Positions 3,901 through 46,170 of a DNA stretch of 64,000 bases are shown piece by piece (the stretch's first letter is position 1; each line of letters opens with the position of its first letter). Both the position numbers and the translations under genes were made by a program. The stretch is from Octopus sinensis. Its lineage: Eukaryota. The DNA lies in the NCBI RefSeq assembly GCF_006345805.1, contig NC_042998.1, positions 114,948,001 to 115,012,000 of the forward strand. Reading direction: 5' to 3'. The notes below the pieces were generated by a model. It was not told the origin of the DNA and ran no database searches. It was given only the letters and a program-made list of their open reading frames with translations.

Positions 3901-5323
3901 TCGTACATTACAAGTACAATCTGTGAATGGAACAGTAAAAATATACAAAACTTTTCTGAAGTTCCTAATGTGAATTTGTTTGTGCTAACTACATCCCAAA
4001 GATGAAGCCGTGTGTCTTTGTTGGAAACTGGGTCCCTCCTCAGTGAAAGAGACATACATAAATACATACATGCAAATACACTCAGACACACACACATATA
4101 CATGAGCCAGTAGTGTGTATGTATATATATATATATATGGCTAATCCTTTGTATTATAGGTAAAATAACTTGAAAATCTTTCTACATGAGGGTGCTTTTG
4201 ATTACATCGACTCTAATGCTCAGGTAGTAATTACATCGACCCCTGAGGATGACAGGCAAAGTGTGCCTCGGTGGGATTTGTTTTCAGGACGTAGAGATAG
4301 ACGAAATGCTTCTAGGCATCTTGACCTATTTACTACCGATTCTGTCAACTCGTTGCCATAGTAATAAGGATTTCCTTTATTTTGTTTTATTTTTATTCTA
4401 TTTTATTTATTTTCCATTTTATATTGTAATTTTTTTTTTAAAGATGAGACTTTAATATCTTGGACTTCAATAGGATCATTTCTGTTTGGCTGCCAGCATC
4501 AATTCTGTTGGAATTGATTTAATATTCAGTGTAATGATACACTTTTATAGGCTAATTAATGAGGTGAAAGTAATTTCGCGATAAATCAATAAATAAACAG
4601 TTATTAGTAATTGGAGAACTTACATCTAATTCTTCCAAATCTTTCTGATAAAAATTTTAATATGTTTATCGCGTGTAACGTGTTGTTTCTCGCATTAGCA
4701 TTAAAGGTATATTGAATGCTTAAATGCTTGTTTCATTTTGTCATTGAGCATTGAGGTGGTTGTGAGGTGAGCAGAAAATAACAGCTAAATAAAATTTATT
4801 TACATGGAAGAAAAATACCGGAGACCTAACACGCGTTGTTTACAAATATTCACAACACGTGCTATTTTCAGGATGTTGACGACAAAATGTGCAGTCACGC
4901 ACAAAATGACAGCATCCAATTCCTGTTTCCTGAATGGGTGAAAATAATAAAAAGTTTAAACCTCTATAACATTTTAAAAACATATTTCTGGAAAAAACGA
5001 AATAACTCCAGCACTTCAATTTGGGCAAGTGTATTATTGAACCAAATTTTAAAATTTTAAGTAAACTTTAATTTTTGAAATGCTGGCAGCCAAACCGAAA
5101 AGATATTTTAATATTCTGTAACAGACTATCCTACATTTTATACTTACGTTATATCAGAGGAACAAATAAATATTTGATCATAGAAGACTTTTGAAGATGG
5201 AATTCTTTGTTTGGTCAAACCTGAACTGCTGAATATTTGCAAAAGAGAGGCGCCTAATTGTAACACGAAAGGCAAAGGTGGTGATATTAATCTAAACAAT
5301 TCTTTAAAGAAATAAAATCATAG

Positions 5324-5705
5324 GGGCAGAAGCGGATGTGTGGTAAGTAGCTTGCTTCCCAACTACATGGTTCCGGGTTCAGTCCCACTGCATGGCACCT
5401 TGGGCAAATGTCTTCTACTATAGGCTCGGGCCGACCGAAGCCTTGTGAGTGGATTTGGTAGACAGAAACTGATAGAAGTCTGGCGTATTATGTATGTGAG
5501 TGTGTGTGCATGTGTGTTTGTCCCCCACCATCGCTTGACAACCGATGCTGGTGTGTTAATGCCGCCGTAACTTAGCGGTTCAGCAAGAATAGGTCGATAG
5601 AATAAGTACTAGGCTTACAAAGAATAAATCCTGAGGTCGATTTGTTCGACTAAATGTGGTGCTCCAGAATGGCTGCAGTTAAATGACTGAAAGATAAAAG
5701 AGTAA
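5324..5705 (+). mobile_element. tRNA-derived SINE, family B, full length; carries an empty copy of the target site used at 10264-14403
   Basis: Head GTGTGGTAAGTAGCTTGCTTCCCAACTACATGGTTCCGGGTTCAGTCCCA, CCTTGGGCAA motif, internal (TG)n, 3' AAATGACTGAAA end. Confidence 0.9.
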
Positions 5706-7916: not shown

Positions 7917-8880
7917 AACTTAGAATAACTTAGAAAGGTTTTGGCCAGTATTGGCCCAGGCCATGTCTAACTTAATAGCACCACCTGGCGAAGTCTTTCA
8001 GTTCAGGATTTGGGCACCAAGGCCCATTCGAGCAGAGAGTTATTGTTTGCGGAGACATATCCGGGTGTGGGTGGTTTGTCCGGTACTGTTTGAAGGAATT
8101 TGTCCAAAGACTTCTTGAATTTTGTGTGGTCAGTTTCTTTTTTGACGTGTCCTGGTGTAATGTTGAAGAGAGCGGGTCCAATTGAGGTGAAATAGTTGTG
8201 CCGTATTGTTGATATGTGATGCAATTTAGATTTTTGTTGTGGACGGATGGCACGTGGTCCAAGCCTTGGATGTATTTTGAAGGTGATGCCAACATCATTC
8301 GGACAGTGCTGATGGAATATTTTCCACATCATACAGATAATGCAGCGTTCACGGCGTCGTTGGAGTGAATACAATTTCAGCTTCTCTAGTCTACCCCAGT
8401 AGTCAAGGTCTGACATGCCATCTATCTTTTTTGTGATTGACCTTTGGGGAGCTTCAATTCTCATAATATTTTGTTTTGTGTAGGGAGACCACAGTGGACA
8501 GCAGTATTCAAGGTGGGGTCGTGCAAAAGTGGAGAAGAGAAGGATAATAGCGTGGGAATCTCTCGACTGGAAGGTTCTGAGAATCCAGGAACACATTCTG
8601 CGGGCCATGTCAACTTTGCTGCTTATATGTGTAGCCCAGCTTATGTTGTTGTCCACTGTTACTCCCAAGTCTCTGATGTTGTTGGATGCCATGAGAATTT
8701 CTCCAGAAGGAAGAGAGTATGGGAGTTTCAGAGCGTCCTCCCTTCCAAAGTGGATCAGTTCGAATTTGTCTTCATTTAGCAACATGTTATTCTTTTCCGC
8801 CCATTGGACAACAGCCAGTAGGTCTGACTGAAGGTTTATTCGGTCATCCACGCCATTGATGACCTTCTGGAGCTTGGAAG
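7917..8880 (-). mobile_element. 5'-truncated, young CR1-type LINE with an open 282-aa ORF2 C-terminal segment (8003-8851)
   Basis: DLLAVVQWAEKNNMLLNEDKFELIHFG, IRDLGVTVDNNISWATHI, LFSTFARPHLEYCCPLWSPY, LEKLKLYSLQRRRER are typical post-RT CR1 motifs. The 5' end starts just after the FADD motif, the 3' tail is (TTCTAAG)x2, and TA-rich microsatellite lies on both sides. Confidence 0.92.
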
Positions 8881-9899: not shown

Positions 9900-10278
9900 T
9901 CTTTTATTCTTTTACTTGTTTTAGTCATTTGACTGCGACCATGTTGGGCCATCGCCTTAAAGGTTTTTTTTTCTTTTGGTCGAAAAATTCGACCCAATGA
10001 CATTCTTTGTAAGCCTCGTACTTATTCTATCGGTCTCTTTCGCCAAACGGCTAATTTACGGAGATGTAAACACACCAACATCGGTTGGCAAGTGACGGTG
10101 AAACACACACACACATATATATATATATATTGATATATGACAGGTTATTTTCAGTTTCCGTCTACCAAATCTACTCACTAGGCTTTGGTTGGCACGAGGC
10201 TGAAGTAAAAGACACTTGCCCAAGATGCGACGCTGTGGGACTGAACGTGGAACCATGTGGTTAGGAAGCAAGCTTCTT
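9900..10278 (-). mobile_element. Family B SINE, 3' portion (host of the ORF1-only insertions); its 5' head remnant lies at 14404-14425
   Basis: Reverse complement of the family B body, ending ...GGAACCATGTGGTTAGGAAGCAAGCTTCTT at 10278. The missing continuation ACCACACAGCTGCGCCTGCGCC appears at 14404. Confidence 0.9.
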
Positions 10279-10819
10279 TATTTCATTACATTTGCCATAA
10301 AGGCAGTACATAGAGTAAAGTAGCTTTGCGGGCTGGACGAGGACATTAATGAAATGAATGATAATGAAAGAAAGATGATAAGGATGGGAGAAGACAAAAA
10401 GCGCCCGCCGACTCCTGCTTCTCTAAAACATTGTTCTTTAAAACCAAACACAAAACGAGGTATTAAACCTCTTACAACTTTTACAACTTTTCAATTTTTG
10501 GACTTAACAGTCTATTACAGACAACAACATAGTTCAATAATTACATATAATATAAATACAATACACAAAGCCCCTCCTCTCAGACCTGGCTTACACTTCC
10601 CTTATGAATGCGCCAGCACTAGGTCGGGGCCCCTCAAGTCGTATCTAAACATGTCCTATCAAACATAAAAAATACATTATCACTTCTCTCTTCCTCCTCT
10701 TTCCGGGCCTCCAGTCAAATATCTAGCCGCCTGCAGAGCAGGTCACGTTGACAGCCGGGGAGTTCAGAAAGAAAGCGAAGTGCCTATTATCAAATGTTTG
10801 TGTCTCACAGTGCCACAAT

Positions 10820-12285
10820 TTATGACTCATCATCAAAATAACTTGTGCCCGCATCCTCTGCCATCCTCCACGCTTCTTCCAAAACCGAATCGAGGTCCGT
10901 GTTAGCGTTGCCCGGGTACAAGCGATATTCCTCATTTAAAAGGCGGCGAGCTGGCAGAAACGTTAGCACGCCGGGTGAAATGCTTAACAGTATTTCGTCT
11001 GCCGTTACGTTCTGAGTTCAAATGCCGCCGAGGTCGACTTTGCCTTTCATCCTTTCGGGGTCAATAAATTAAGTACCAGTTACGCACTGGGGTCGATGTG
11101 ATCGACTTAATCCCTTTGTCTGTCCTTGTTTGTCCCCTCTATGTTTAGCCCCTTGTGGGTAGTAAAGAAATAGATATTCCTCATTGAGCTCCTCCAGCTG
11201 TGGAGGCCATTCGGGGTCCTGTGTGAAGGCTGAAGGTGCTCCCTTATGGTGCTTTTCCATCACATTTTCAATCTCTCCGCCTCTATGGAAGAAGATCAAT
11301 ATATCGTCTTTTCCCGGGGGCGGGATATTCAATTCTTTCATTGGCGGCACAGTTCCCGCCAACGGTGTTTCTTCTCCTGTCGGTGGCACAACCCCAACCG
11401 ACGTAGTTCCGGGACATTCCGGTACTATGTCACCGACTGCCGGCAATGTCCCGTTTCTCTTCCGCTTCCTCTTTTTTTTCAACTGAGGGAGGGTGCGTCT
11501 CCTCCGTGGCCGGAAGATTCGCCTTTCCCTCATCCCTAGGAAATTTTGGTGATTACCCATTGTTGCTCACCTTCCTCTTTCGGCCCCTGTTTGAGGAGTC
11601 CTCCGTTTCCTCGGCCGTCTTCATTCCCTCTTCTACAGGGGTCTCACTTAACTGCTCCGGGATCTTATTTTGTTCCCGGGGACAGTTTTTCTCTATATGG
11701 CCGGACTCGAGGCACCGATGACACCTGGGGGGGGCGACCCTCAAGTATCACCGGGTACCTGCACCCGGCCATTTAAAAAAAATCTGGAAAAACCAGATTG
11801 GCTGGTTGGGTCCAAAGGGTCAAAATTGCTTTTGACCCAACCCAAACAGCCACAGGAAGAACTTTCACATTAAGGAGCTTGGTCCCGCTGCCACCCAGAC
11901 CCCGGCGGATAATCTCCTCTATCCACTCGGGTTTTTTCCCGGGTGGCAGCCCGCAGATCCAAGCTTTCGTCAACCTCTTCCCATGATACGTGGGAAGAAA
12001 TAAAATTTCCTTACCCTCCAGGGGTTGACTAGCAAATTTGAGAGCCTCTTCAGGGTTGTCAAATAACAACCACACCGTTGCATATCTGACACCCCTGGAA
12101 ATGAATTTAATTGTTGGCAAATACTCTGCCAACTCCTTTTCAATTGCCGTCTTTTCGAATAGGGCGATGGTGTCGAGAGCCTTGGTGTAGGTTCTCTACA
12201 CCACCGTCCTATCTTCACGGTCTTTTAACAACTTTTTAGGCGGTATAATCTCCCATTCCAAAATTTTGTCATTTTTCATTGCCAT
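10820..12285 (-). pseudogene. Disrupted ORF1 of element 1 (RRM-like region + CX2CX4HX4C zinc knuckle + low-complexity tail)
   Basis: ATG at 12285 gives MAMKNDKILEWEIIPPKKLLKDREDRTVV*RTYTK...AEYLPTIKFISRGVRYATVWLLFDNPEEALKFA...LPTYHGKRLTKAWICGLPP, then RCHRCLESGHIEKNCP (11553-11744). It resumes past the SINE as ...EEAWRMAEDAGTSYFDDES* (stop 10820-10822). Confidence 0.8.
10937..11172 (+). mobile_element. Family A SINE inserted into ORF1 of element 1
   Basis: Complete head to ...GTAGTAAAGAAATA tail, flanked by 13-bp TSD GATATTCCTCATT at 10924-10936 and 11173-11185. Confidence 0.95.
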
Positions 12286-12931
12286 GTTGCATTTTTTTTT
12301 TGAAATATATTCAAAATAAAACTTAAAAGCGAGAAGAAGAAAGAAATCAAAAGAAAGTCACAATAAACAAAAAGGAGAAAGTCAAATAAAGTTTAGAAGA
12401 AAGTCAATAGTTCAGGAACACAGCAAAAAGCTCTTCCGGCCATTCGGTACTCCCGGCCTAGGTTCAACCTGGAACGCCACAACTGAAACACAACTTCCAC
12501 AAAAATTGATATACAAATTGTTCAATCTTCGGAGGCAAAACACTCCCCCATACAGCAGTTCTCACAATTATTAAAGTTCTTCAAAAGGCACAATACAAGC
12601 AATAATTCTCATAAATAAGTGAGAAAATTATTCACTCAACGTAAACCGAAGACGAGGATACGCCCCACCAAAAATGAATCCAATAAATTCTGAATACACA
12701 AAAACAGCAGCCGCCGAGAGCAGACGAAATTGTCCCAGAGCTGGGCACAATTTACTGAAAAAATAATTCGCACGCAATAAATTATGCCCAGTTCACAACA
12801 AACAAAATCACCTACCTCGACAACCTTCTCTGTTTTTGTTCTTTTTTCTTTTTAGGACGGAGCTCAAAGCTCACGTCCTCACCGTTCAGTGTCAAGAAGT
12901 CAACTCCACGACCGGAACCGGAAGCAAGCTT

Positions 12932-14388
12932 TTTTATTTTATTAAATTTGCCATAAAGGCAATACACAGAGGGGACACTACAACACATGTGGGGACATAT
13001 AGCAATTAAAAATAAAATATGATATAATGAATGAACATGCAAGTGCACATGAAGAACAAATTAAAATCTGATAATATGAATGATATCTGAAAATGATATT
13101 ATGAAGAGTGTGCTACTCACCCCACACTGAGTAACACGACTCACTGTCTCTGGGTACTGAGTCCTTTTTCTCTTTTCGTCCAATCCTTTTTCCCTTTTGA
13201 CTGTCACTTAATGATAACATTCTCTCCGTCATGCATTCATAACCTTTTTCAACGGGAGGGGGTCTTCTAAATTTTGTGGTGTCTGTTCTTTCTTTTTCTT
13301 TTTTTCTTGAGGGGAAACGGGGTGGGTGGGTTTGGTGTCTGTATGGGGAGGGTGCGTCTGAGTGGTCTTGTGCGGGATGGGGTTGGACTGGGGTGCCACA
13401 TCACACTCAGTGTCTTTTCTTTTTTCCTCTTTCTCCTATTGCGCTCTGCAATTTTCCATTCTTCCTCTTTTTTATTGTTTCCTTCGTCTATTTTGTCTTC
13501 CTCTCTTTTCTCTTCTGTCTGCGCAACTATATCCTCAGCCGTAGTCCTTCGTAGAGGGCAGTAAGCTCTAATGTGGCCCTTTTGCCCACATTTAAAAGAA
13601 CGTGGTACTCTGCCCTCTACCCACACCCTCAGCACGATTTCCCCCAGCGTCACAGTCTCTGCCAAGTTCTCAAGTTGTTCCTCTTCCGTCTGAATAATTA
13701 ACTCGAGCGTTCTTCCTTTCTACCCTCCTTCTTCTGTTTCTGTGGCTTGGAGGACAGCCACCTTCTCCTCGCTTCCAGTAGGGACAGCTGCCGCTACCCA
13801 AGCCACATTTATATCAGGCGGAATTCCTTCTACCCTTATCTTGGAGGTCCTTCCAAGATACGTAGGTAGAAGGACCATTTCCTTCGTCTTTACCGTTTTG
13901 TTCGCCAGCCTCCTTGCCTCCTCCTCTGTTCTAAACTGGACTACCATTGTCCCATATTGGCATCCTCTTGTCATGTATATTACTCCGTTGGATTCCTCCT
14001 ATACTACCTTTTGTATGTTCTCTATTTCTATTTGGTCGACCTTCTTACTCTTTATCGAGTAAACTTTGTATATGACCGTTCTTCTTTTTATGCCATCCAT
14101 TATTCTTTGTGGGGGTGACAACGTCACGTTGCCTCCCATTTTCTGCGCCATTTTTCCATGCTCCTTCATTCTTGATAAATCCACCTCTTTTCTCTCCACC
14201 TCCACAGCCTCTGCGAAACTCTTCGTTTTCCTCAAATATTCATCCATGCCTTCTACTGCTCTCAGCAGCTCCTCCTATGAAGAAGACAGCTCAGACCCGC
14301 TAAGGTCTGAGTACATTGTCTTACCGTAGCAACAAAACCAACGTCCGACTCGCACACAAACGACAAACCGAATGCACTATGGGTAACC
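12932..14388 (-). mobile_element. ORF1-only L1/Tx1-like retroelement, element 2 (~1.46 kb)
   Basis: Bounded by target duplications at 12920-12931 and 14389-14403. 3' end ...CTTTATGGCAAATTTAATAAAATAAAAA. One gag-like ORF and a ~300-nt 3' UTR; too short to hold an ORF2. Confidence 0.82.
13230..14316 (-). pseudogene. Disrupted ORF1 of element 2, homologous to element 1 ORF1
   Basis: ATG 14316. Reads ...SPPQRIMDGIKRRTVIYKVY...MTRGCQYGTMVVQFRTEEEARRLANKTVKTKEMVLLPTYLG..SKIRVEGIPP...EGRVPRSFKCGQKGHIRAYCP (first knuckle Cys replaced by Ser). In-frame stops present. Confidence 0.8.
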
Positions 14389-14439
14389 GGAAGCAAGCTT
14401 CTTACCACACAGCTGCGCCTGCGCCTATATCTTATATCT

Positions 14440-15147: not shown

Positions 15148-15550
15148 ATACTTTTCTACTCTAGGTACAATGCCCGAAATGTTTGGGAAGGGGAACAGTC
15201 GACTAGATCGACTCCAATGCGTTACTGGTACGTGTATTTAATCGACCCCGAAAGGATGAAAGGCAAAATGGACTTCGAGGAATTTGAACTCAGAACTTAA
15301 GACAGACGAGATACCTATTTCTTTACTACCCACAAGGGGCTAAACACAGAGGGGACAAACAAGGACAGACAAACGGATTAAGTCGATTACATCGCCCCCA
15401 GCGCATAACTGGTACTTAATTTATCGACCCCGAAAGGATGAAAGGCAAAGTCGACCACGACGGAATTTGAACTCAGAACGTAACGGCAGACAAAATACGG
15501 CTACGCATTTCGCCCGGCGTACTAAAGTTTCTGAGTGTTCGCCGCCTTAA
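15148..15550 (-). mobile_element. Family A SINE dimer
   Basis: Two body units joined at CGAGATACC|TATTTCTTTAC (~15315), with a single head at the right end. Confidence 0.88.
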
Positions 15551-20634: not shown

Positions 20635-20806
20635 TCGCCAGGAGTGACTGTGTGGTAAGTAGCTTGCTTACCAACCATATGGTTCCGGGTTCAGTCCCAC
20701 TGCGTGGCATCTTGCGCAAGTGTCTTCTACTATAACCTCGGGCTAACCAAAGCCTTGTGAGTGGATTTGGTAGACGGAAACTCAATGAAGGCCGTCAATA
20801 TATATG

Positions 20807-20846
<40 letters not shown>

Positions 20847-28444: not shown

Positions 28445-29172
28445 TGCAGAATATGTGGAGATGGAAGTAACTGCAGAATATGTGGAGATGGAAAAGAAAT
28501 ATTACAAGTAACTGCAGAATATGTGGAGATGGACAAGAAACAATAAATCATATTATCTCTAGCTGCCCAGTCCTGGTTAAGAAGGAATATATTCACAGAC
28601 ATGACAGAGTCATACATTGGAAGCTATGCCAACATTATGGAATAACAACAGAAAAAAGATGGTATAGGCACACACCAGAAAAGGTCACAGAAAACGAGAA
28701 AGCAACCATACTCTGGGATATGCCGATACACACAGATAGAGAAATTAAGGCCAACAGACCAGATATAGTTGTCAGAGACCATGAAGAAAAAAAATGCTTT
28801 CTAATTGATGTATCAGTACCGGCAGATGACAACGTGTCTCTAAAAGAAATGGAGAAACTCTCAAAATACAAAGACCTGGAAATAGAGGTAACTAGAATGT
28901 GGAATCTGAAAACAGAAACAATTCCTATCATAGTAGGTGCATTAGGCATGATAAAAAAATATTCAGACAATACATAACAAAAACACCAGGACTTACAAAC
29001 ACATATTACATACAGAAAATTGCACTACTAGGCACTGCACACATCCTACGCAGAACACTTTCCATACAATAACCATCAGAGCATCACAACAAATCACAGC
29101 ACATACCCAAGGCACACAGAGCTGCGCTCGGTAGTGAAGTGAAAGCACGCTATAAAAATAAAAATAAAACTA

Positions 29173-36161: not shown

Positions 36162-36755
36162 GGTGTGCGTGTGTATGTGTGTACATATATATGTAGACAT
36201 ATATATATGCATACATAAACACATACATATATGTAAAATGTATGTATATAAAATTCTCCCAAATATATAACAAACAAAGACTTCATAAGAAAAAGTCATC
36301 AGTAAATTAATTTTCTTTCTGTTTTTTTTTCTATCTTTGATTATTTATTTTCTTCCGTTTTCTGCAATTTATTTTCACCTTTAGGGAAAATTTACAATTA
36401 TTGAAACCGGAACTAACCAACAAATATCCAGTTTGTGCCGATTTGTTAAAAGCAAGAAAAAACTTGTTTGAAATCCATGTGTAAATAAATTTCAATAGCC
36501 CTGGAGATATAGAAATCAAGTAATTAGACAAGAATAATGTTAGTCTTCGTTATGCCAAGTTGTGCAGACCAAATAATATATTTCAATTGTACAAGTAAAT
36601 TATTTAAGAACATCCCAATGGTGAGATTAAGTAGATAATATTGTAGTTTCTCGCCTCATAGCTGGCAATATCTGCCCCAGATAAATATTTAAACTATTCT
36701 TGTTTCAATGTATTTACGTGTATTGTCGATTTCTTATCATAAGAACTGTGGATAA

Positions 36756-37250
36756 GGCGGCGAGCTGGCAGAATCGTTAGCACGCCGGGCAAAATGCTTA
36801 GCGGTATTTCGTCTGCAGCTCGTTCTGAGTTCAAATTCCGCCGAGGTCGACTTTGCCATTCATCCTTTCGGGGTCGATAAATTAAGTACTAGTTACGCAT
36901 TGGGGTGGATGTAATCGACTTAATCCCTTTGTCTGTTCTTGTTTGTCCCTTCTATGTTTAGCCCCTTTTGGCAATAAAGAAATAAGAAACGTTTGCACGG
37001 CGGGCGAAATGCTTTACGTTCTGAGTTCAAATTCAGCCGAGGTCGTCTTTGCCTTTCATCCTTCCGAGATCGCTAGATTCAATACCAGTTGCGTACTGGG
37101 ATCGGTCTATTCGACTGTCCCCTCCCCCAAAATTTCGGGCCTTGTTCCTAGATTAGAAAAGATTATAAGAACTGTAGATTGGCAGAATCGGTCGATTGCA
37201 TCAAGGTCTGAGTTCGAAATCCGCCGAGATCAACATTTTCGGTAAAATAA
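36756..37250 (+). mobile_element. Family A SINE cluster (full copy, second body, partial head)
   Basis: AAGGCGGCGAGCTGGCAGAATCGTTAGCACGCCGGGC head; two alternative 3' tails in succession. Confidence 0.9.
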
Positions 37251-37587: not shown

Positions 37588-37965
37588 GCCGTGCTTGTGT
37601 GGTAAGACGCTTGCTTTCCAGCCACATGGTTCCGGGTTCAGTCCCACTGCGTGGCACTTTGGGCTAGTGTTTTCTTTTATAACCTCGGGCCGGCCAAAGC
37701 CTTGTAAGTGGATTTGATTGACGGAAACTGAGAGAAGTTCGTTCTATATATATATATACGTGTTTGTGTGTCTGTGTTTGTCCTCCCACCATCGCTTGAC
37801 AACTGATGCTGGTGTGTTTACGTCACTGTAACTTAGCGTTTCTGCAAAAAAAGACAGAATAAGTACTAGGCTTACAATGAATAAGCTCTGGGAACGATTT
37901 CTTCAACTAAAACCTTTTAAGTGCTCTAGCATGGCTGCAGTCAAATGACTGAAACAAGTAAAAGA
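37588..37965 (+). mobile_element. Family B SINE
   Basis: GTGTGGTAAGACGCTTGCTTTCC head to CAAATGACTGAAACAAG end. Confidence 0.9.
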
Positions 37966-42255: not shown

Positions 42256-43459
42256 GAAATATTAACACGGAGAAATATTAACATAGAGAAAATAGGTATG
42301 GTATTCATTGCTTTATAGAACATACACGAGTTTTAAGTTGCCGTCATTATTATATACCAATAGTTGAAACATTATATAATCCTGCGTTCATGTCATCAGT
42401 GTTCTGCAGTAACTATATGGTGGTATGTATGGTGGTCATCCGTCATTTGACGTATAGTTTATCAACTGAATTACCTGCTTTTGAAGTATCTTGTAAGTGG
42501 AAGAGCATCCTATAGATACGCGTACCCATGATTTAATTCTCATACAGAATATGTATGGTAGAGTGTGTGACAAGACGTACATTTTCAATTACAATTATAA
42601 TCCATCGATGGACAGGTATTCCTGTCAATATTTACTGAAAATCATTCATAAGTTTAGTGGGTGCTCTGTACCTATAGAAAATATTGATCCCAAATTACCT
42701 GCAATAGAATTGAACCCAGGACCTCGTGGTTACGAAGCAAACTTCTTTACTATTTGTCCATTTTCTGCGTACATACAGAAATTCATTCTGACTCGCACGC
42801 ACAGACGCATACACGCACACTTTTATTTGTATGTATCTATGTAAGTCTGTATATGTGTTTGTGTGTATGTGTGTGTATTTGTGTGTGTGTGTGTGTGTGT
42901 TTGTGCGTGTATGCATGAGTGTGTTTTTGTGTGCGTACGGGGGTGTTTGTATCATTATATACAAATTTGTATTTCATTTGAGAACATTAACGTAATTGTT
43001 TTCAGTTTTCATGTCGGTCACTCACTAGTCCAATACATTTCTCATTACAAAGTGTTACTAGGAATTAACATTGCAAAATGGAAATGATCTAAAATTTGAA
43101 ACCATTCAAAATGTCCCTATGTTAACATTTAGGCTTCATAAAACTCAAATATTATGTGAAGTAATTATGTATGTCATTATTCAGCTTAATTCAAGATTTC
43201 TTTCCAATAGAGAAAAAAACAGTTTCTAACGTAGACCCAAATCTCCTTCATTGGAATTTCAATATCAACAACAGGGTATTTTTGTTTGCATATATATATA
43301 TCTAAGTATGTATGTTTGTATGTATGTATGTATGTATGTATGTATGTCTGGATGGATGGATGGATGGATGGATGGATGGATGTATGTATGTGCAGGTTTG
43401 TATGTTTTATGTATGTATTTCCATGCATATAGTTGCATATCCAGAATGCTCATATATAT

Positions 43460-45240
43460 TTAAATGATAAACTTCTGGAAAATTTTACAGATGTTTACAG
43501 TTCTATTCGAATTAGGTTTTTCCTTCCTGGTTTTGAGAAGCCTAATTTCTCTAGACTAGTATTTAGGCAGGGCCCCAATAATTACAGGTATAAACCTGGA
43601 CTTGTAATCTGGATATAGTAGCTGCAGATTTCTCAATAGTTCAGCATAGGTGTTTTCTTTTTCACTAATCTTCAGCTTTATGTTAACATCCGCTGGGCAG
43701 CTAATTTCCCCAACTGTACACAGTTTCTCTTCTCTATCTCAATCATTATATCAGGTCTGTTGTGCTTACATTTTATTCAGGTCTTCACTGGGACATTCCA
43801 CCAGTATTCCTTTTTATTATGAGTGGCTATGGCTTCTACCATATTGTGGGTTCTTATTTCTTTGTCCTCGAGATTATCGTTCCGACGGATTTCATTATAG
43901 AGTGTCCTAGCTACAACATCATATCTCAGCAGTAGATAATACCGTGATGATATTTTCGGACAAATGCTTATGAGGTGGGTAATATCATCAGTGTGAACTC
44001 CAGAAAGTCTGCATCGGTTGTCCCATTTTACTGCATTTCCTGCATCCCTGTACCTTTTGTGCATCAGGTAATTGGTTGATATTTCCTGTTCCTGGATTGG
44101 AAACGCATTCCCTTCAAAGTGGGAGGTAGTAATCCTGATATTCGTCTGTGATAAACTGCTTTGATGGTCGATGTAACTATTATCACGGAGCTTTCCACTA
44201 ACATATCCATGCATAGTCTTCTGCTCATATAGGCTCAGCCTTTCATCTGACGATACGTTGCGGTAGAGTCGTGCAACCTCTTTGGGCCTGTATTCTAGGT
44301 TATCAGGCAAACATTTTGCTCAAGGATCTGCCTTCCAAGTTATCAGCCTCATGAATGCAAACTTAGTCAAGGGATGCATTTCGACACTTGGTGGTTAAAG
44401 ATGTTGCCGAAGAGATATGATGTGGCATTCAAAGGCATTTTGGATCGATCTTAAGCCTCTGCCGCTGCCTTGTTTTCGTTTTAGGTAGGAGCGGTCTACG
44501 TCACTGTTTATGTGGAAATTATGTGTGCTTGTTAGTATTTTTTGCGTTTTCACCTCAATGGCTCGGATATCATTAAACGTCCAAGGGAGCAGCCCAAATA
44601 TTGCTATGAGTACTGGCACTACAAACACATTATGGGCTACTGTTTTATTGAATGCAGAGAATTCTGAGGTCCAAATTTTCTTTATTCGGTTGTAATATTC
44701 TTTAGTGACACTTGTTTTGTTACAGGTGCCATTGTAAGATATATTTTCATCCACCCTTAGACACCTGTAATATTCCTCGTCAGATACAGGGGAAACAGTC
44801 AAATCATTGATGGAGAAGTTACTAGTCTGGTTCAAAGTTTTCCCCCTTTTCACAACGATATAACATAATTTATCCTGACCAAACTCCAACCCTACATCCT
44901 TTGAGAATGTTGTAACTAGGTCAAGGCTCTTTTTCATCTCATGCATATTATTTGCATAAAGTTTTAAGTCATTCACAAAGAATCAGTATGTAATTTTGGT
45001 ATTCCTTGCGAACCTGTGAGACATCCTTCAGACTTCCTTAGCATGAATGATAAGGAGTTTACAGAAAGTATAAACAGAGAGGCTGTCACATTGGAATATG
45101 CCTTAGCGATTCTGTATTCTGTCAGTGGTAATACAGTCACACTTTTTGTTTAATTTCAAGATGATGTCCTACGATGAAGTCAGGTCAGCTATGGCTTTCA
45201 CTATGCTCATTGGAACTTTAGCAAATTAAAGAGCTTCTAG
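43460..45240 (-). mobile_element. Dong/R4 LINE fragment (RT C-half to endonuclease), disrupted, interrupted by a (TATG)n/SINE-like region at its 5' side
   Basis: MNDLKLYANN (YMDD motif), KDVGLEFGQDK, VDRSYLKRKQGSGRGL, FEGNAFPIQEQEISTNYL, CRLSG...HLISICP, IPVIIGAL. Confidence 0.88.
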
Positions 45241-45658: not shown

Positions 45659-45902
45659 TACACATACATAGATACACACTTTTCTACTCTAGGCACAAGA
45701 CCCCAAAATTTGGGGGAGGTGGGCAGTCGATTAGATCGAGCCCAGTACGCAACTGATACTTAATTTATCGACCCCGGAAGGATGAAAGGCAAAGTCGACC
45801 TCGGCAGTATTTGAACTCAGAACGTAAATACAGACGAAATACCGCTAATCATTTCGCCCGGCATGCTAGCGTTTCTGTATATATACATATATATATATAT
45901 AT

Positions 45903-45943
<41 letters not shown>

Positions 45944-46159
45944 ACACATACATAGATACAGACTTTTCTACTCTAGGCACAAGACCCCAAAATTTGGGGG
46001 AGGTGGGCAGTCGATTAGATCGAGCCCAGTACGCAACTGATACTTAATTTATCGACCCCGGAAGGATGAAAGGCAAAGTCGACCTCGGCAGTATTTGAAC
46101 TCAGAACGTAAATACAGACGAAATACCGCTAATCATTTCGCCCGGCATGCTAGCGTTTC

Positions 46160-46170
<11 letters not shown>
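45634..46170 (-). repeat. Tandem duplication (284-bp period) of a family A SINE plus flanking (GA)n/(TA)n
   Basis: TTTCTACTCTAGGCACAAGACCCC at 45681 and 45965. The copies share the same private variants. Confidence 0.92.

What the first reader, a model, noticed from the sequence alone, without database searches (positions are those of the whole stretch)
10264..14403. Two different retroelements stacked at one exact site in a SINE head: candidate SINE-targeting retrotransposon system
Seen: a family B SINE is split just after its A-box. The sequence GGAAGCAAGCTT(CTT) occurs at 10264-10278, 12920-12931 and 14389-14403, giving SINE 5' - TSD - element 2 - TSD - element 1 - TSD - SINE 3'. Removing both inserts restores the SINE head, and empty sites are visible at ~5345, ~20655 and ~37600. 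Both inserts share the SINE's orientation and begin GGTT after the TSD. Established: Tx1-clade non-LTR elements are often sequence-specific for multicopy RNA genes or repeats (e.g. Keno/U2, Mutsu/5S, Dewa/tRNA arrays) and form tandem arrays by re-inserting at the duplicated target. Inference: an endonuclease in this genome recognises the tRNA-like D-arm of an abundant SINE, using another mobile element as a safe harbour and destroying its Pol III promoter. I do not know of such a family being described from cephalopods, but could not search.
Basis: partly seen in the sequence, partly recalled or inferred. Interest (0 to 1): 0.9.

Follow-up and report, generated by a model that had tools for sequence, protein, structure and literature searches.

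The report
SINE-head-targeting octopus retroelements, stacked
Two decayed, non-autonomous relatives of an octopus L1/Tx1-type LINE sit one behind the other at exactly the same nucleotide in the head of an abundant SINE, and related elements hit that same site in other octopus genomes, so this is a new example of a known habit of such LINEs: inserting at a fixed sequence inside another mobile element.

Summary
GGAAGCAAGCTT occurs exactly three times (10264, 12920, 14389). Removing the two inserts restores a minus-strand SINE ('SINE-B') that aligns through the junction with intact copies in the window.

Both inserts lie on the minus strand, in the SINE's orientation. e1 (12935-14388) and e2 (10279-12919) each encode only a decayed ORF1 (two RRM-like domains plus one CCHC knuckle). 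Neither has an endonuclease or reverse transcriptase. They share only a ~40-nt 3' tail.

Related ORF1 elements in Octopus sinensis (L001) and in a sequencing-run assembly of unidentified species (L070) have their 5' junction at the same nucleotide (…GCTTGCTTCC|). That makes four elements at three loci.

Another relative (L003) sits in the head of a second SINE family with a 19-bp duplication, so the flanking repeats are target duplications, not element termini.

Full-length relatives carry an ORF2 with an APE endonuclease, a reverse transcriptase and a zinc finger, closest to human L1 ORF2p. They occur in tandem arrays, stacked at a shared 19-mer, or inside (ATT)n.

This is the known behaviour of target-specific Tx1-type LINEs, which already includes insertion into other transposons and 'tandem insertions sandwiching a TSD'. 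The autonomous partner and the clade assignment remain inferred. Verdict: new member of a known kind, moderate interest.

The parts
14404..14425 (-). SINE-B head, 5' part (GGCGCAGGCGCAGCTGTGTGGT), containing the box-A-like motif
   Evidence: contiguous with TSD copy 1 and matches the heads of intact copies at 5338, 20650 and 37597.
14389..14403 (-). Target-site duplication, copy 1 (minus strand AAGAAGCTTGCTTCC), still joined to the SINE head
12935..14388 (-). Element e1, about 1.45 kb, ORF1-only non-autonomous LINE derivative. It begins GGTTACCC and ends ...TGCCTTTATGGCAAATTTAATAAAATAA.
   Evidence: single ORF1 with 2 in-frame stops; no ORF2 remnant; homologues P0001 and P0002 at 54-67% identity.
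13447..14247 (-). e1 ORF1 remnant (two RRM-like domains plus a CCHC knuckle, ...FKCGQKGHIRAYCP...)
   Evidence: (zf-CCHC, sub-threshold).
12920..12934 (-). Target-site duplication, copy 2 (AAAAAGCTTGCTTCC, 14/15; exact over 12 nt), sandwiched between e1 and e2
10279..12919 (-). Element e2, 2.64 kb (about 2.39 kb without the nested SINE), ORF1-only non-autonomous LINE derivative of a different lineage. It begins GGTTCCGG and ends ...TGCCTTTATGGCAAATGTAATGAAATAA.
   Evidence: ORF1 with frameshifts and stops, about 29% aa identity to e1; 66% identity to O. sinensis LOC115225585; no ORF2 remnant.
11556..12285 (-). e2 ORF1 remnant
10937..11173 (+). Second SINE family (SINE-A) nested inside e2, flanked by the 12-bp duplication ATATTCCTCATT (10925-10936 and 11174-11185)
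   Evidence: sequence; many copies in other loci.
10264..10278 (-). Target-site duplication, copy 3 (AAGAAGCTTGCTTCC), joined to the rest of the SINE
10101..10263 (-). Rest of SINE-B (TAACCACATGGTTCCACGTTCAGTCC..., with the box-B-like GGTTCAGTCC) and its microsatellite tail
10279..10320 (-). Shared 3' tail of e2: small hairpin UGCC-UUUAU-GGCA followed by an A-rich end. The same tail in e1 is at 12935-12975.
   Evidence: the only DNA-level similarity between e1 and e2; hairpin kept by compensatory changes across relatives.
5338..5359 (+). Empty target site in an intact SINE-B copy. Others are at 20650-20671 and 37597-37618.

Best explanation
A SINE-B copy on the minus strand was hit twice, in separate events, by target-primed reverse transcription at one sequence-specific site just 3' of its box A.

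Each event duplicated about 15 bp (AAGAAGCTTGCTTCC). The second event used one of the two copies of the target left by the first. This gives head-TSD-e1-TSD-e2-TSD-rest.

The inserts are two distantly related ORF1-only (HAL1-like) derivatives of an octopus L1/Tx1-type LINE group. Each encodes only a nucleic-acid-binding ORF1 protein, with two RRM-like domains and a CCHC knuckle, and both copies are now decayed.

They must have been mobilised in trans by an autonomous LINE. That LINE's reverse transcriptase would recognise their shared 3' hairpin tail (UGCC-UUUAU-GGCA plus an A-rich end), and its APE-type endonuclease would cut the SINE head at fixed positions: bottom strand GGT/AAGAAG, top strand about 15 nt downstream at CTTCC/TAACC.

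The abundant SINE serves as a harmless, very numerous landing site. Each insertion separates box A from box B and so inactivates that SINE copy.

Shown: the anatomy, the duplications, recurrence of the site at other loci, absence of ORF2, homology to ORF1 and tails of full LINEs, and target-specific behaviour of relatives.

Inferred: trans-mobilisation, tail recognition, endonuclease specificity, the order of the two insertions, and the Tx1 clade assignment.
For: Anatomy and empty sites.

Same junction nucleotide at other loci: L001 in O. sinensis reads ...GGTAAGTAGCTTGCTTCC|TGTGCATGCG upstream of an e2-like intact ORF1. L070-72 read ...TGGTAAAAAAAACTTGCTTCC|GGTATAGCG upstream of an e1-like ORF1.

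In 237 kb of octopus DNA, 17 SINE-B copies span the site intact. Only the window and L001 end at it in that scan.

The flanking repeats change with the target in relatives: L003 has the 19-bp CAGAAA(C/T)GTTAGCACGCCG in a SINE-A head and L007 has the 15-bp TGCTGGGTTCG(T/G)CTA.

ORF1-only architecture recurs in e1, e2, L003 (intact 384-aa ORF1), L006 and L007, with no ORF2 remnant.

Homologous ORF1s lie upstream of an APE + RVT_1 + zf-RVT ORF2 in L002, L005 and L008. The best solved relative is human L1 ORF2p, E 2e-71.

Relatives behave as target-specific LINEs: tandem arrays, two different LINEs each preceded by TTTTTCAAACAGCTGGTCG, and a LINE flanked on both sides by (ATT)n.

Tails are homologous, with a hairpin kept by compensatory changes. 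e1 and e2 share an identical hairpin tail despite about 29% ORF1 identity.

The ORF1 model shows tandem RRM folds.

Literature: Tx1-type LINEs and their non-autonomous passengers target specific sites in other transposons, with 'tandem insertions sandwiching a TSD' (PMC4494074). Tx1 is among the LINE clades listed for bivalves in the mollusc survey; no L1 clade appears in that list (PMC10294476). L1-Tx1 is active in O. vulgaris (PMC13282606).
Against: No autonomous element with the TGCCTTTATGGCAAAT tail, or sitting in a SINE-B head, was found in the DNA available. The endonuclease that would confer specificity is therefore hypothetical.

Only three loci carry the junction. For L001 and L070 only the 5' junction is visible: L001 is rearranged downstream and the L070 contig ends.

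Two of the three loci were reached through ORF1 homology, so they are not an unbiased census.

Relatives with similar tails use other targets, so tail and target are not shown to be strictly linked.

The SINE head is not recognised as a tRNA by ARAGORN or Rfam. 'tRNA-like' rests on box A and box B motifs read by eye.
Confidence: 0.72

Rival explanations
1. Targeting is directed by the Pol III machinery or by local structure rather than by DNA sequence. Integration would be attracted to SINE heads occupied by TFIIIC/TFIIIB, as with Dictyostelium TRE elements or yeast Ty3.
For: Two different SINE families are hit, both immediately 3' of their box-A-like motif. All insertions are in the SINE's orientation.
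Against: The junction is at the identical nucleotide in four elements at three loci, inside the transcribed unit rather than at a distance from it. Relatives of the same group target sequences with no Pol III promoter: (ATT)n, a 19-mer in another repeat and a 15-mer.
Confidence: 0.08
2. Homing is guided by RNA rather than by endonuclease specificity. Read-through transcripts that carry target sequence at their ends would anneal to SINE heads, as proposed for R2 and R1-type elements, so once one copy sat in a SINE its descendants kept returning there.
For: Every copy in a SINE head is flanked by SINE sequence that a read-through transcript would carry. e2's first 8 nt (GGTTCCGG) equal the SINE-B consensus just upstream of box B. 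Co-transcription with the target is discussed for Tx1-associated elements in PMC4494074.
Against: Three divergent ORF1 lineages share the site (crude tree). This is easier to explain by a common protein acting in trans. Specificity of Tx1L and R1 is attributed to the endonuclease in the literature cited. There is no direct evidence here either way.
Confidence: 0.12
3. The 12-15-mers are part of the elements themselves, or e1-TSD-e2 moved as one composite unit, or the stack arose by recombination. On this reading there is no site specificity.
For: Only one locus in the window. The middle copy differs by one base.
Against: The 15-mer occurs once in intact SINEs, and head plus one copy plus rest restores a normal SINE. 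Relatives with the same tail family carry different flanking repeats. Independent loci have single elements at the same nucleotide. e2 is preceded by only 15 nt of SINE, not by a head.
Confidence: 0.03
4. e1 and e2 were full-length autonomous LINEs when they inserted and lost ORF2 later by deletion at this locus.
For: Both copies are decayed. e2 has a long region after ORF1.
Against: At least five independent elements have the same ORF1-only layout with complete tails and duplications: e1, e2, L003 with an intact ORF1, L006 and L007. No ORF2 fragments are detectable.
Confidence: 0.05

Closest known systems
Tx1-clade target-specific non-LTR retrotransposons that insert into other transposons (Tx1L in the piggyBac element Tx1D; Tx1-Mar and its passenger SINEU-3 in Mariner-N4_AMi; Tx1-9_AMi in Harbinger; others in LTR elements) - PMC4494074
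   Same: The target is a fixed site inside an abundant mobile element, with a duplication of about 15-16 bp and fixed orientation. 'Tandem insertions sandwiching a TSD' arise by sequential insertion. Non-autonomous passengers share the target of the autonomous LINE. ORF2 of the relatives has APE + RT + a C-terminal zinc finger. Sister lineages target microsatellites.
   Different: The target here is the Pol III promoter region of a SINE, which I did not find described. The passengers are ORF1-encoding elements of 1.5-2.6 kb, not short SINE-like RNAs. The autonomous partner is not identified. Clade membership is not tested by phylogeny.
Keno (U2 snRNA), Mutsu (5S rRNA), Dewa (tRNA-Leu spacer), Kibi and Koshi (microsatellites) - target-specific Tx1-group LINEs of fishes (PMC3706591, PMC4494074)
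   Same: Sequence-specific use of multicopy small-RNA-related sequences or simple repeats as safe landing sites. The (ATT)n-flanked LINE in L008 parallels Kibi and Koshi.
   Different: Those elements target host genes, their spacers or microsatellites. Here the multicopy target is itself a retroposon. Dewa sits in a spacer, not inside the tRNA-like body.
HAL1 ('half-L1') and other internally deleted non-autonomous LINEs (Bao and Jurka 2010, cited in PMC4494074)
   Same: ORF1 is retained and ORF2 is absent. The 3' end is of LINE type, and the elements presumably depend on a full-length LINE in trans.
   Different: HAL1 is a mammalian L1 derivative without target specificity. Here the ORF1 is of the RRM + CCHC type, and several divergent ORF1-only lineages coexist.
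Dictyostelium TRE/DRE and yeast Ty3 (elements targeted to Pol III genes; from my own knowledge)
   Same: Association with Pol III promoter-bearing sequences.
   Different: Those elements integrate at a distance outside the tRNA gene through contacts with transcription factors. Here integration is at an exact nucleotide inside the unit.

Membership tests
Tx1 clade of non-LTR retrotransposons | Reverse-transcriptase domain groups with Tx1L, Keno and others in a phylogeny | not testable with these tools
   e1 and e2 have no RT. No reference Tx1 or L1 RT sequences were available for the relatives' RT. Indirect only: the best solved relative is human L1 ORF2p, and Tx1, not L1, is in the LINE clade list of the mollusc survey (PMC10294476).
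Tx1 clade of non-LTR retrotransposons | ORF2 with an N-terminal APE-type endonuclease, an RT and a C-terminal zinc finger, preceded by an ORF1 | tested here: met
   Met for the full-length relatives, not for e1 and e2 themselves. L002 ORF2 has Exo_endo_phos + RVT_1 + zf-RVT, and a homologous ORF1 lies upstream in L002, L005 and L008.
Target-specific LINEs (behavioural class) | Independent copies inserted at the same nucleotide of the same target sequence, in one orientation, with a duplication | tested here: met
   Four elements at three loci share ...GCTTGCTTCC|. There are three copies of the 15-mer in the window. The sample is small and partly chosen through ORF1 homology.
Target-specific LINEs (behavioural class) | Most genomic copies of the family lie in the target (census) | not testable with these tools
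   No octopus genome could be searched by DNA. Metagenome scans found no octopus DNA.
HAL1-like ORF1-only non-autonomous LINE | ORF1 present and ORF2 absent between complete 5' and 3' ends | tested here: met
   The layout recurs in L003 (intact ORF1), L006 and L007.
HAL1-like ORF1-only non-autonomous LINE | Termini shared with an identified autonomous parent | tested here: inconclusive
   The 3' tail belongs to the same family as full LINE tails. However, no LINE with the identical TGCCTTTATGGCAAAT tail was found, and the 5' UTRs show no similarity.
SINE | Internal Pol III promoter head; short; no coding capacity | tested here: not met
   e1 and e2 are 1.45 and 2.64 kb, encode ORF1, and have no box A/B head of their own.
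R2/NeSL/Utopia-type site-specific LINEs | Single ORF with a restriction-like endonuclease C-terminal to the RT | tested here: not met
   The relatives have two ORFs and an N-terminal APE endonuclease. R2 proteins match only the RT core, E about 1e-24.
tRNA-derived SINE (the target, SINE-B) | Head recognisable as a tRNA | tested here: not met
   ARAGORN finds no tRNA in the window. Rfam gives no tRNA match on an intact copy or on the whole window. Only the box A (TGGCTGTGTGG) and box B (GGTTCAGTCC) motifs are visible by eye.

The most novel reading that the evidence does not exclude
Octopus genomes hold a radiation of L1/Tx1-type LINEs in which different lineages have each evolved a different exact target: two SINE heads, (ATT)n, and sites in other repeats.

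A set of ORF1-encoding non-autonomous elements would use a short 3' hairpin 'address' to borrow a given partner's endonuclease and so inherit its target.

One branch would insert into the promoter of SINE-A, the very SINE that carries this LINE group's own 3' tail. That would be a LINE lineage landing in, and silencing, its own parasite.

Occupancy of SINE heads might then be frequent enough to shape SINE activity in a genome where SINEs make up about 12% of the DNA.
Probability: 0.25. Interest if true: 0.7.

Novelty: new member of a known kind. Interest (0 to 1): 0.45.

Why it matters
Target-specific LINEs are natural examples of programmable 'safe-harbour' insertion, and each new target adds an endonuclease specificity that could be studied.

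A SINE head as target is a neat case of one retroelement living inside another's promoter, in a genome where SINEs are about 12% of the DNA (PMC13282606).

The ORF1-only passengers suggest a modular system: the tail chooses the partner, and the partner chooses the site.

For genome annotation, these stacked elements explain split SINEs. They also explain spurious gene models, for example ORF1 fused to zinc-finger genes in O. bimaculoides.

It does not change the current understanding of LINE biology.

Tried and rejected
- **Word-indexed protein searches** with e1 ORF1, e2 ORF1 and their alignment gave only three hits. P0001 and P0002 have no genomic record in the collection.
- **Metagenome DNA scans.** The tail pattern gave 0 hits. 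The 3' junction pattern gave 60 hits; none had SINE-B sequence downstream or the e1/e2 tail upstream, so they are taken as chance matches. The collections therefore hold no usable octopus DNA for a census.
- **Pfam** recognises only a sub-threshold CCHC knuckle in the ORF1s. Long ORF1-containing proteins from the exhaustive search are annotation chimeras with Helitron or LDL-receptor parts, not ORF1-ORF2 fusions.
- **The match of e2 to L001 18946-19062** is only the nested SINE-A, not a second element.
- **The SINE-A dimer at 36754-37170** looked like a SINE inserted in a SINE head, but the whole dimer is flanked by one duplication, so it moved as a unit.
- **The SINE-B-like fragment at 42711-42747** starts exactly at the duplication's first base, but nothing recognisable lies upstream.
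- **tRNA identity of the SINE head** was not confirmed.
- **The order of the two insertions** could not be determined. e2 looks more decayed, but there is no consensus to date either copy.
- **The ORF1 tree** is a crude neighbour-joining tree without usable support values. It is used only to say that the SINE-B-site elements are not each other's closest relatives.


Full report
**1. The observation**

The 12-mer GGAAGCAAGCTT occurs exactly three times on the + strand, at 10264, 12920 and 14389. With one mismatch allowed there is a fourth match at 5348-5359 on the other strand. The chance expectation is 0.18, and no shuffle out of 100 reached four matches.

The outer two copies are identical over 15 nt. 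The middle copy differs at one position.

The interrupted element is a SINE on the minus strand, called SINE-B here. Its first 22 nt are at 14425..14404 and the remainder runs from 10263 down to about 10101.

Joining the two flanks with a single copy of the 15-mer gives a sequence that aligns without a break across the junction to three other copies in the window: 5307-5576, 20648-20829 and 37596-37837. In those copies the site reads GTGTGGTAAGTAGCTTGCTTCC|CAAC.ACATGGTTCC.

The duplicated segment starts one or two bases after the box-A-like motif (TGGCTGTGTGG in consensus copies) and ends about 15 nt before the box-B-like GGTTCAGTCC. The 4.1 kb of insert therefore separates the two halves of the presumed Pol III promoter.

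ARAGORN and Rfam do not recognise the head as a tRNA. 'tRNA-like' rests only on those motifs.

**2. The two inserts**

Both inserts lie on the minus strand, in the SINE's orientation.

- e1 (12935-14388) begins GGTTACCC and ends ...TGCCTTTATGGCAAATTTAATAAAATAA.
- e2 (10279-12919) begins GGTTCCGG and ends ...TGCCTTTATGGCAAATGTAATGAAATAA.
- e2 carries a nested copy of a second SINE family (SINE-A, 10937-11173, + strand) with its own 12-bp duplication.

At the DNA level the two elements share only the last ~40 nt. That tail occurs nowhere else in the window.

Each encodes one reading frame. In e1 it is interrupted by two stops, and in e2 by several frameshifts and stops. The two proteins are about 29% identical and each ends in a CCHC zinc knuckle.

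An AlphaFold model of the intact O. sinensis homologue (mean pLDDT 77.7) shows two beta-alpha-beta-beta-alpha-beta domains. Its best structural matches are tandem-RRM proteins: NONO/SFPQ and hnRNP A1 UP1. This is a LINE ORF1 protein of the RRM + CCHC type.

Neither element contains any trace of an endonuclease or reverse transcriptase.

**3. Relatives elsewhere**

An exhaustive profile search found 932 ORF1 homologues. Those that could be traced to a named source are cephalopod. Twelve look-ups gave about 170 kb of genomic context from O. sinensis, O. vulgaris, O. bimaculoides and a sequencing-run assembly of unidentified species.

(a) *L001, O. sinensis.* An intact e2-like ORF1 (66% aa identity) is preceded by a ~510-nt leader whose 5' junction is ...GGCTGTGTGGTAAGTAGCTTGCTTCC|TGTGCATGCG. 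This is the same nucleotide of a SINE-B head. The copy is rearranged downstream, so its 3' junction is lost.

(b) *L070-72, one locus seen in three sequencing runs.* An e1-like ORF1 is preceded by ...GCGTGGCTGCATGGTAAAAAAAACTTGCTTCC|GGTATAGCG. This is again the same position in a SINE-B-like head, and the element again starts GGT.

(c) *L003, O. sinensis.* A 1.6-kb ORF1-only element has an intact 384-aa ORF1 (45-54% identity to e1) and the tail ...CCTTTATGGATAAATAAAGAAAT. It sits in the head of SINE-A, flanked by a 19-bp duplication, CAGAAA(C/T)GTTAGCACGCCG. Removing it restores the SINE-A head.

(d) *L007, O. vulgaris.* An ORF1-only element has a 15-bp duplication, TGCTGGGTTCG(T/G)CTA. L069 (O. 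bimaculoides) has a non-SINE flank.

So the flanking repeats change with the target while the tail family stays the same. The repeats are therefore target duplications, not element termini.

In the scan of the 237 kb then held, 17 SINE-B copies spanned the site intact and two loci ended at it. L070, fetched later, is a third such locus.

**4. The autonomous relatives**

In L002, L005 and L008 a homologous ORF1 lies upstream of an ORF2 of about 1130 aa. That ORF2 has Exo_endo_phos (APE), RVT_1 and zf-RVT domains. Its best solved relative is human L1 ORF2p, aligned over residues 3-868 at E 2e-71. R2 proteins match only the RT core.

These LINEs behave like target-specific elements:

- L002 (O. 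vulgaris) and L004 (O. sinensis) are head-to-tail arrays of three or four full-length copies. Copies in L002 are 99-100% identical.
- In L005 two different LINEs are stacked, each preceded by the same 19-mer, TTTTTCAAACAGCTGGTCG. This is the architecture seen in the window.
- In L008 a full-length LINE is flanked on both sides by (ATT)n.

Their 3' tails are homologous to the e1/e2 tail and to the tail of SINE-A. All have a small terminal hairpin kept by compensatory changes (GCC/GGC, CCC/GGG, GAUU/AAUC) followed by AAUAAAGAAAU. This is the kind of tail that 'stringent' LINE reverse transcriptases recognise, and it marks SINE-A as a passenger of this LINE group.

**5. Mechanism**

The best-supported reading is two sequential target-primed reverse-transcription events at one sequence-specific site. 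The second event used one of the two target copies created by the first.

Because e1 and e2 encode no enzyme, cutting and copying must have been done in trans by a full-length LINE.

e1 and e2 have nearly identical hairpin tails despite very divergent ORF1s. In a crude ORF1 tree, the SINE-B-site elements fall in three separate lineages interleaved with elements that use other targets. This fits a model in which the tail selects the partner and the partner's endonuclease selects the site.

These last steps are inference. No LINE with this tail, and no LINE in a SINE-B head, is present in the DNA I could reach.

Alternatives considered:

- Attraction by Pol III factors. This is made unlikely by the single-nucleotide precision and by relatives that target non-Pol III sequences.
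- RNA-guided homing by read-through transcripts. This is not excluded.
- The repeats being element termini, or a composite unit. Rejected.
- Post-insertion loss of ORF2. This is unlikely given five independent ORF1-only elements.

**6. Comparison with what is known**

Kojima (PMC4494074) describes the following:

- Tx1-clade LINEs with target preference for other transposons: Tx1L in the piggyBac element Tx1D, Tx1-Mar in Mariner-N4_AMi, Tx1-9_AMi in Harbinger, and others in LTR elements.
- Sister lineages in microsatellites.
- A non-autonomous passenger (SINEU-3) that shares the 16-bp target.
- 'Tandem SINEU-3 insertions ... sandwiching a TSD', explained by sequential insertion.

The window shows the same phenomenon.

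Fish Tx1-group LINEs target U2, 5S and a tRNA-Leu spacer (PMC3706591).

Tx1 is among the LINE clades the mollusc survey lists for bivalve genomes, and no L1 clade appears in that list (PMC10294476). L1-Tx1 has 13 recently active families in O. vulgaris, where SINEs are 11.6% of the genome (PMC13282606). None of these papers, nor my other searches, mention a SINE head as target or ORF1-only passengers in cephalopods. The search is limited to open-access text.

Membership in the Tx1 clade proper needs an RT tree with reference sequences, which I could not build.

**7. Verdict**

- The two elements are non-autonomous ORF1-only derivatives, not complete retrotransposons.
- The endonuclease that would recognise the SINE head is still hypothetical.
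- Using another mobile element as a landing site is already a known Tx1 habit.

It is a new member of a known kind, and a useful lead for a genome-wide census, rather than a new mechanism.

Noticed in passing
L003:9439-11075 (O. sinensis CM016880.1): An ORF1-only element with an intact 384-aa ORF1 is inserted in the head of the second SINE family (SINE-A), with a 19-bp duplication CAGAAA(C/T)GTTAGCACGCCG. SINE-A carries the same 3' tail family as this LINE group, so a relative of its own mobiliser is sitting in its promoter.
   Followed up: partly
L002:4440-19300 (O. vulgaris OX597840.1); L004:4186-19895 (O. sinensis CM016867.1): Head-to-tail arrays of three or four full-length LINEs with a period of about 5.28 kb. 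Copies in L002 are 99-100% identical. Short recurring junction motifs are seen: ACAC..GATAGGACG in L002 and ACTGAATACTCGTCAT in L004. The targets of these arrays were not identified.
   Followed up: partly
L005:9768-9786 and 15395-15413 (O. bimaculoides CM046605.1): Two different full-length LINEs are stacked head to tail, each preceded by the same 19-mer TTTTTCAAACAGCTGGTCG. L005, L006 and L007 elements all lie about 90-100 nt downstream of a shared motif (TTTCTATTTTTGAAA.CAGT) of an unidentified host repeat.
   Followed up: partly
L008:9722-15375 (O. sinensis CM016872.1): A full-length LINE of the same group is flanked on both sides by (ATT)n. This looks like a microsatellite-specific lineage, comparable to Kibi and Koshi.
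   Followed up: partly
window 36754-37170; 45725-45877; 46009-46161: A SINE-A dimer has a second unit that starts at SINE-A position ~16, and the whole dimer is flanked by ATAAGAACTGTRGAT. Two further SINE-A copies start at position 15 right after (TA)n. Position 15 is where the L003 duplication begins, so it may be a preferred nick site.
   Followed up: partly
window 42711-42747 (-): A SINE-B-like fragment begins exactly at AAGAAGTTTGCTTCG, the first base of the duplication. Only low-complexity sequence lies upstream. It could be the downstream half of another hit SINE, or a 5'-truncated copy.
   Followed up: partly
window 12912-12919 (-): The first 8 nt of e2 (GGTTCCGG) are identical to the SINE-B consensus just upstream of box B. 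e1 starts GGTTACCC and the L070 element starts GGTATAGC. This may be chance, or a trace of how the 5' junction is made.
   Followed up: no
L002:16342-16698: A small conserved ORF (118 aa) lies between ORF1 and ORF2 of the full-length LINE and has no Pfam match. e2 and the L001 element also have a conserved coding-looking stretch after ORF1 (…DDILIFFHRGG… and …DDLVIFFHKGG…).
   Followed up: no
P0002 (O. bimaculoides A0A0L8GU38); P0070: Public gene models fuse an e1-like ORF1 to C2H2 zinc fingers, or an ORF1 piece to a Helitron helicase. These are probably annotation chimeras caused by the elements.
   Followed up: no
window 8003-8851 (-), 28480-28977 (+), 43777-44976 (-): Fragments of other LINE-type reading frames, unrelated to the ORF2 of the group studied here at the thresholds used.
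   Followed up: no
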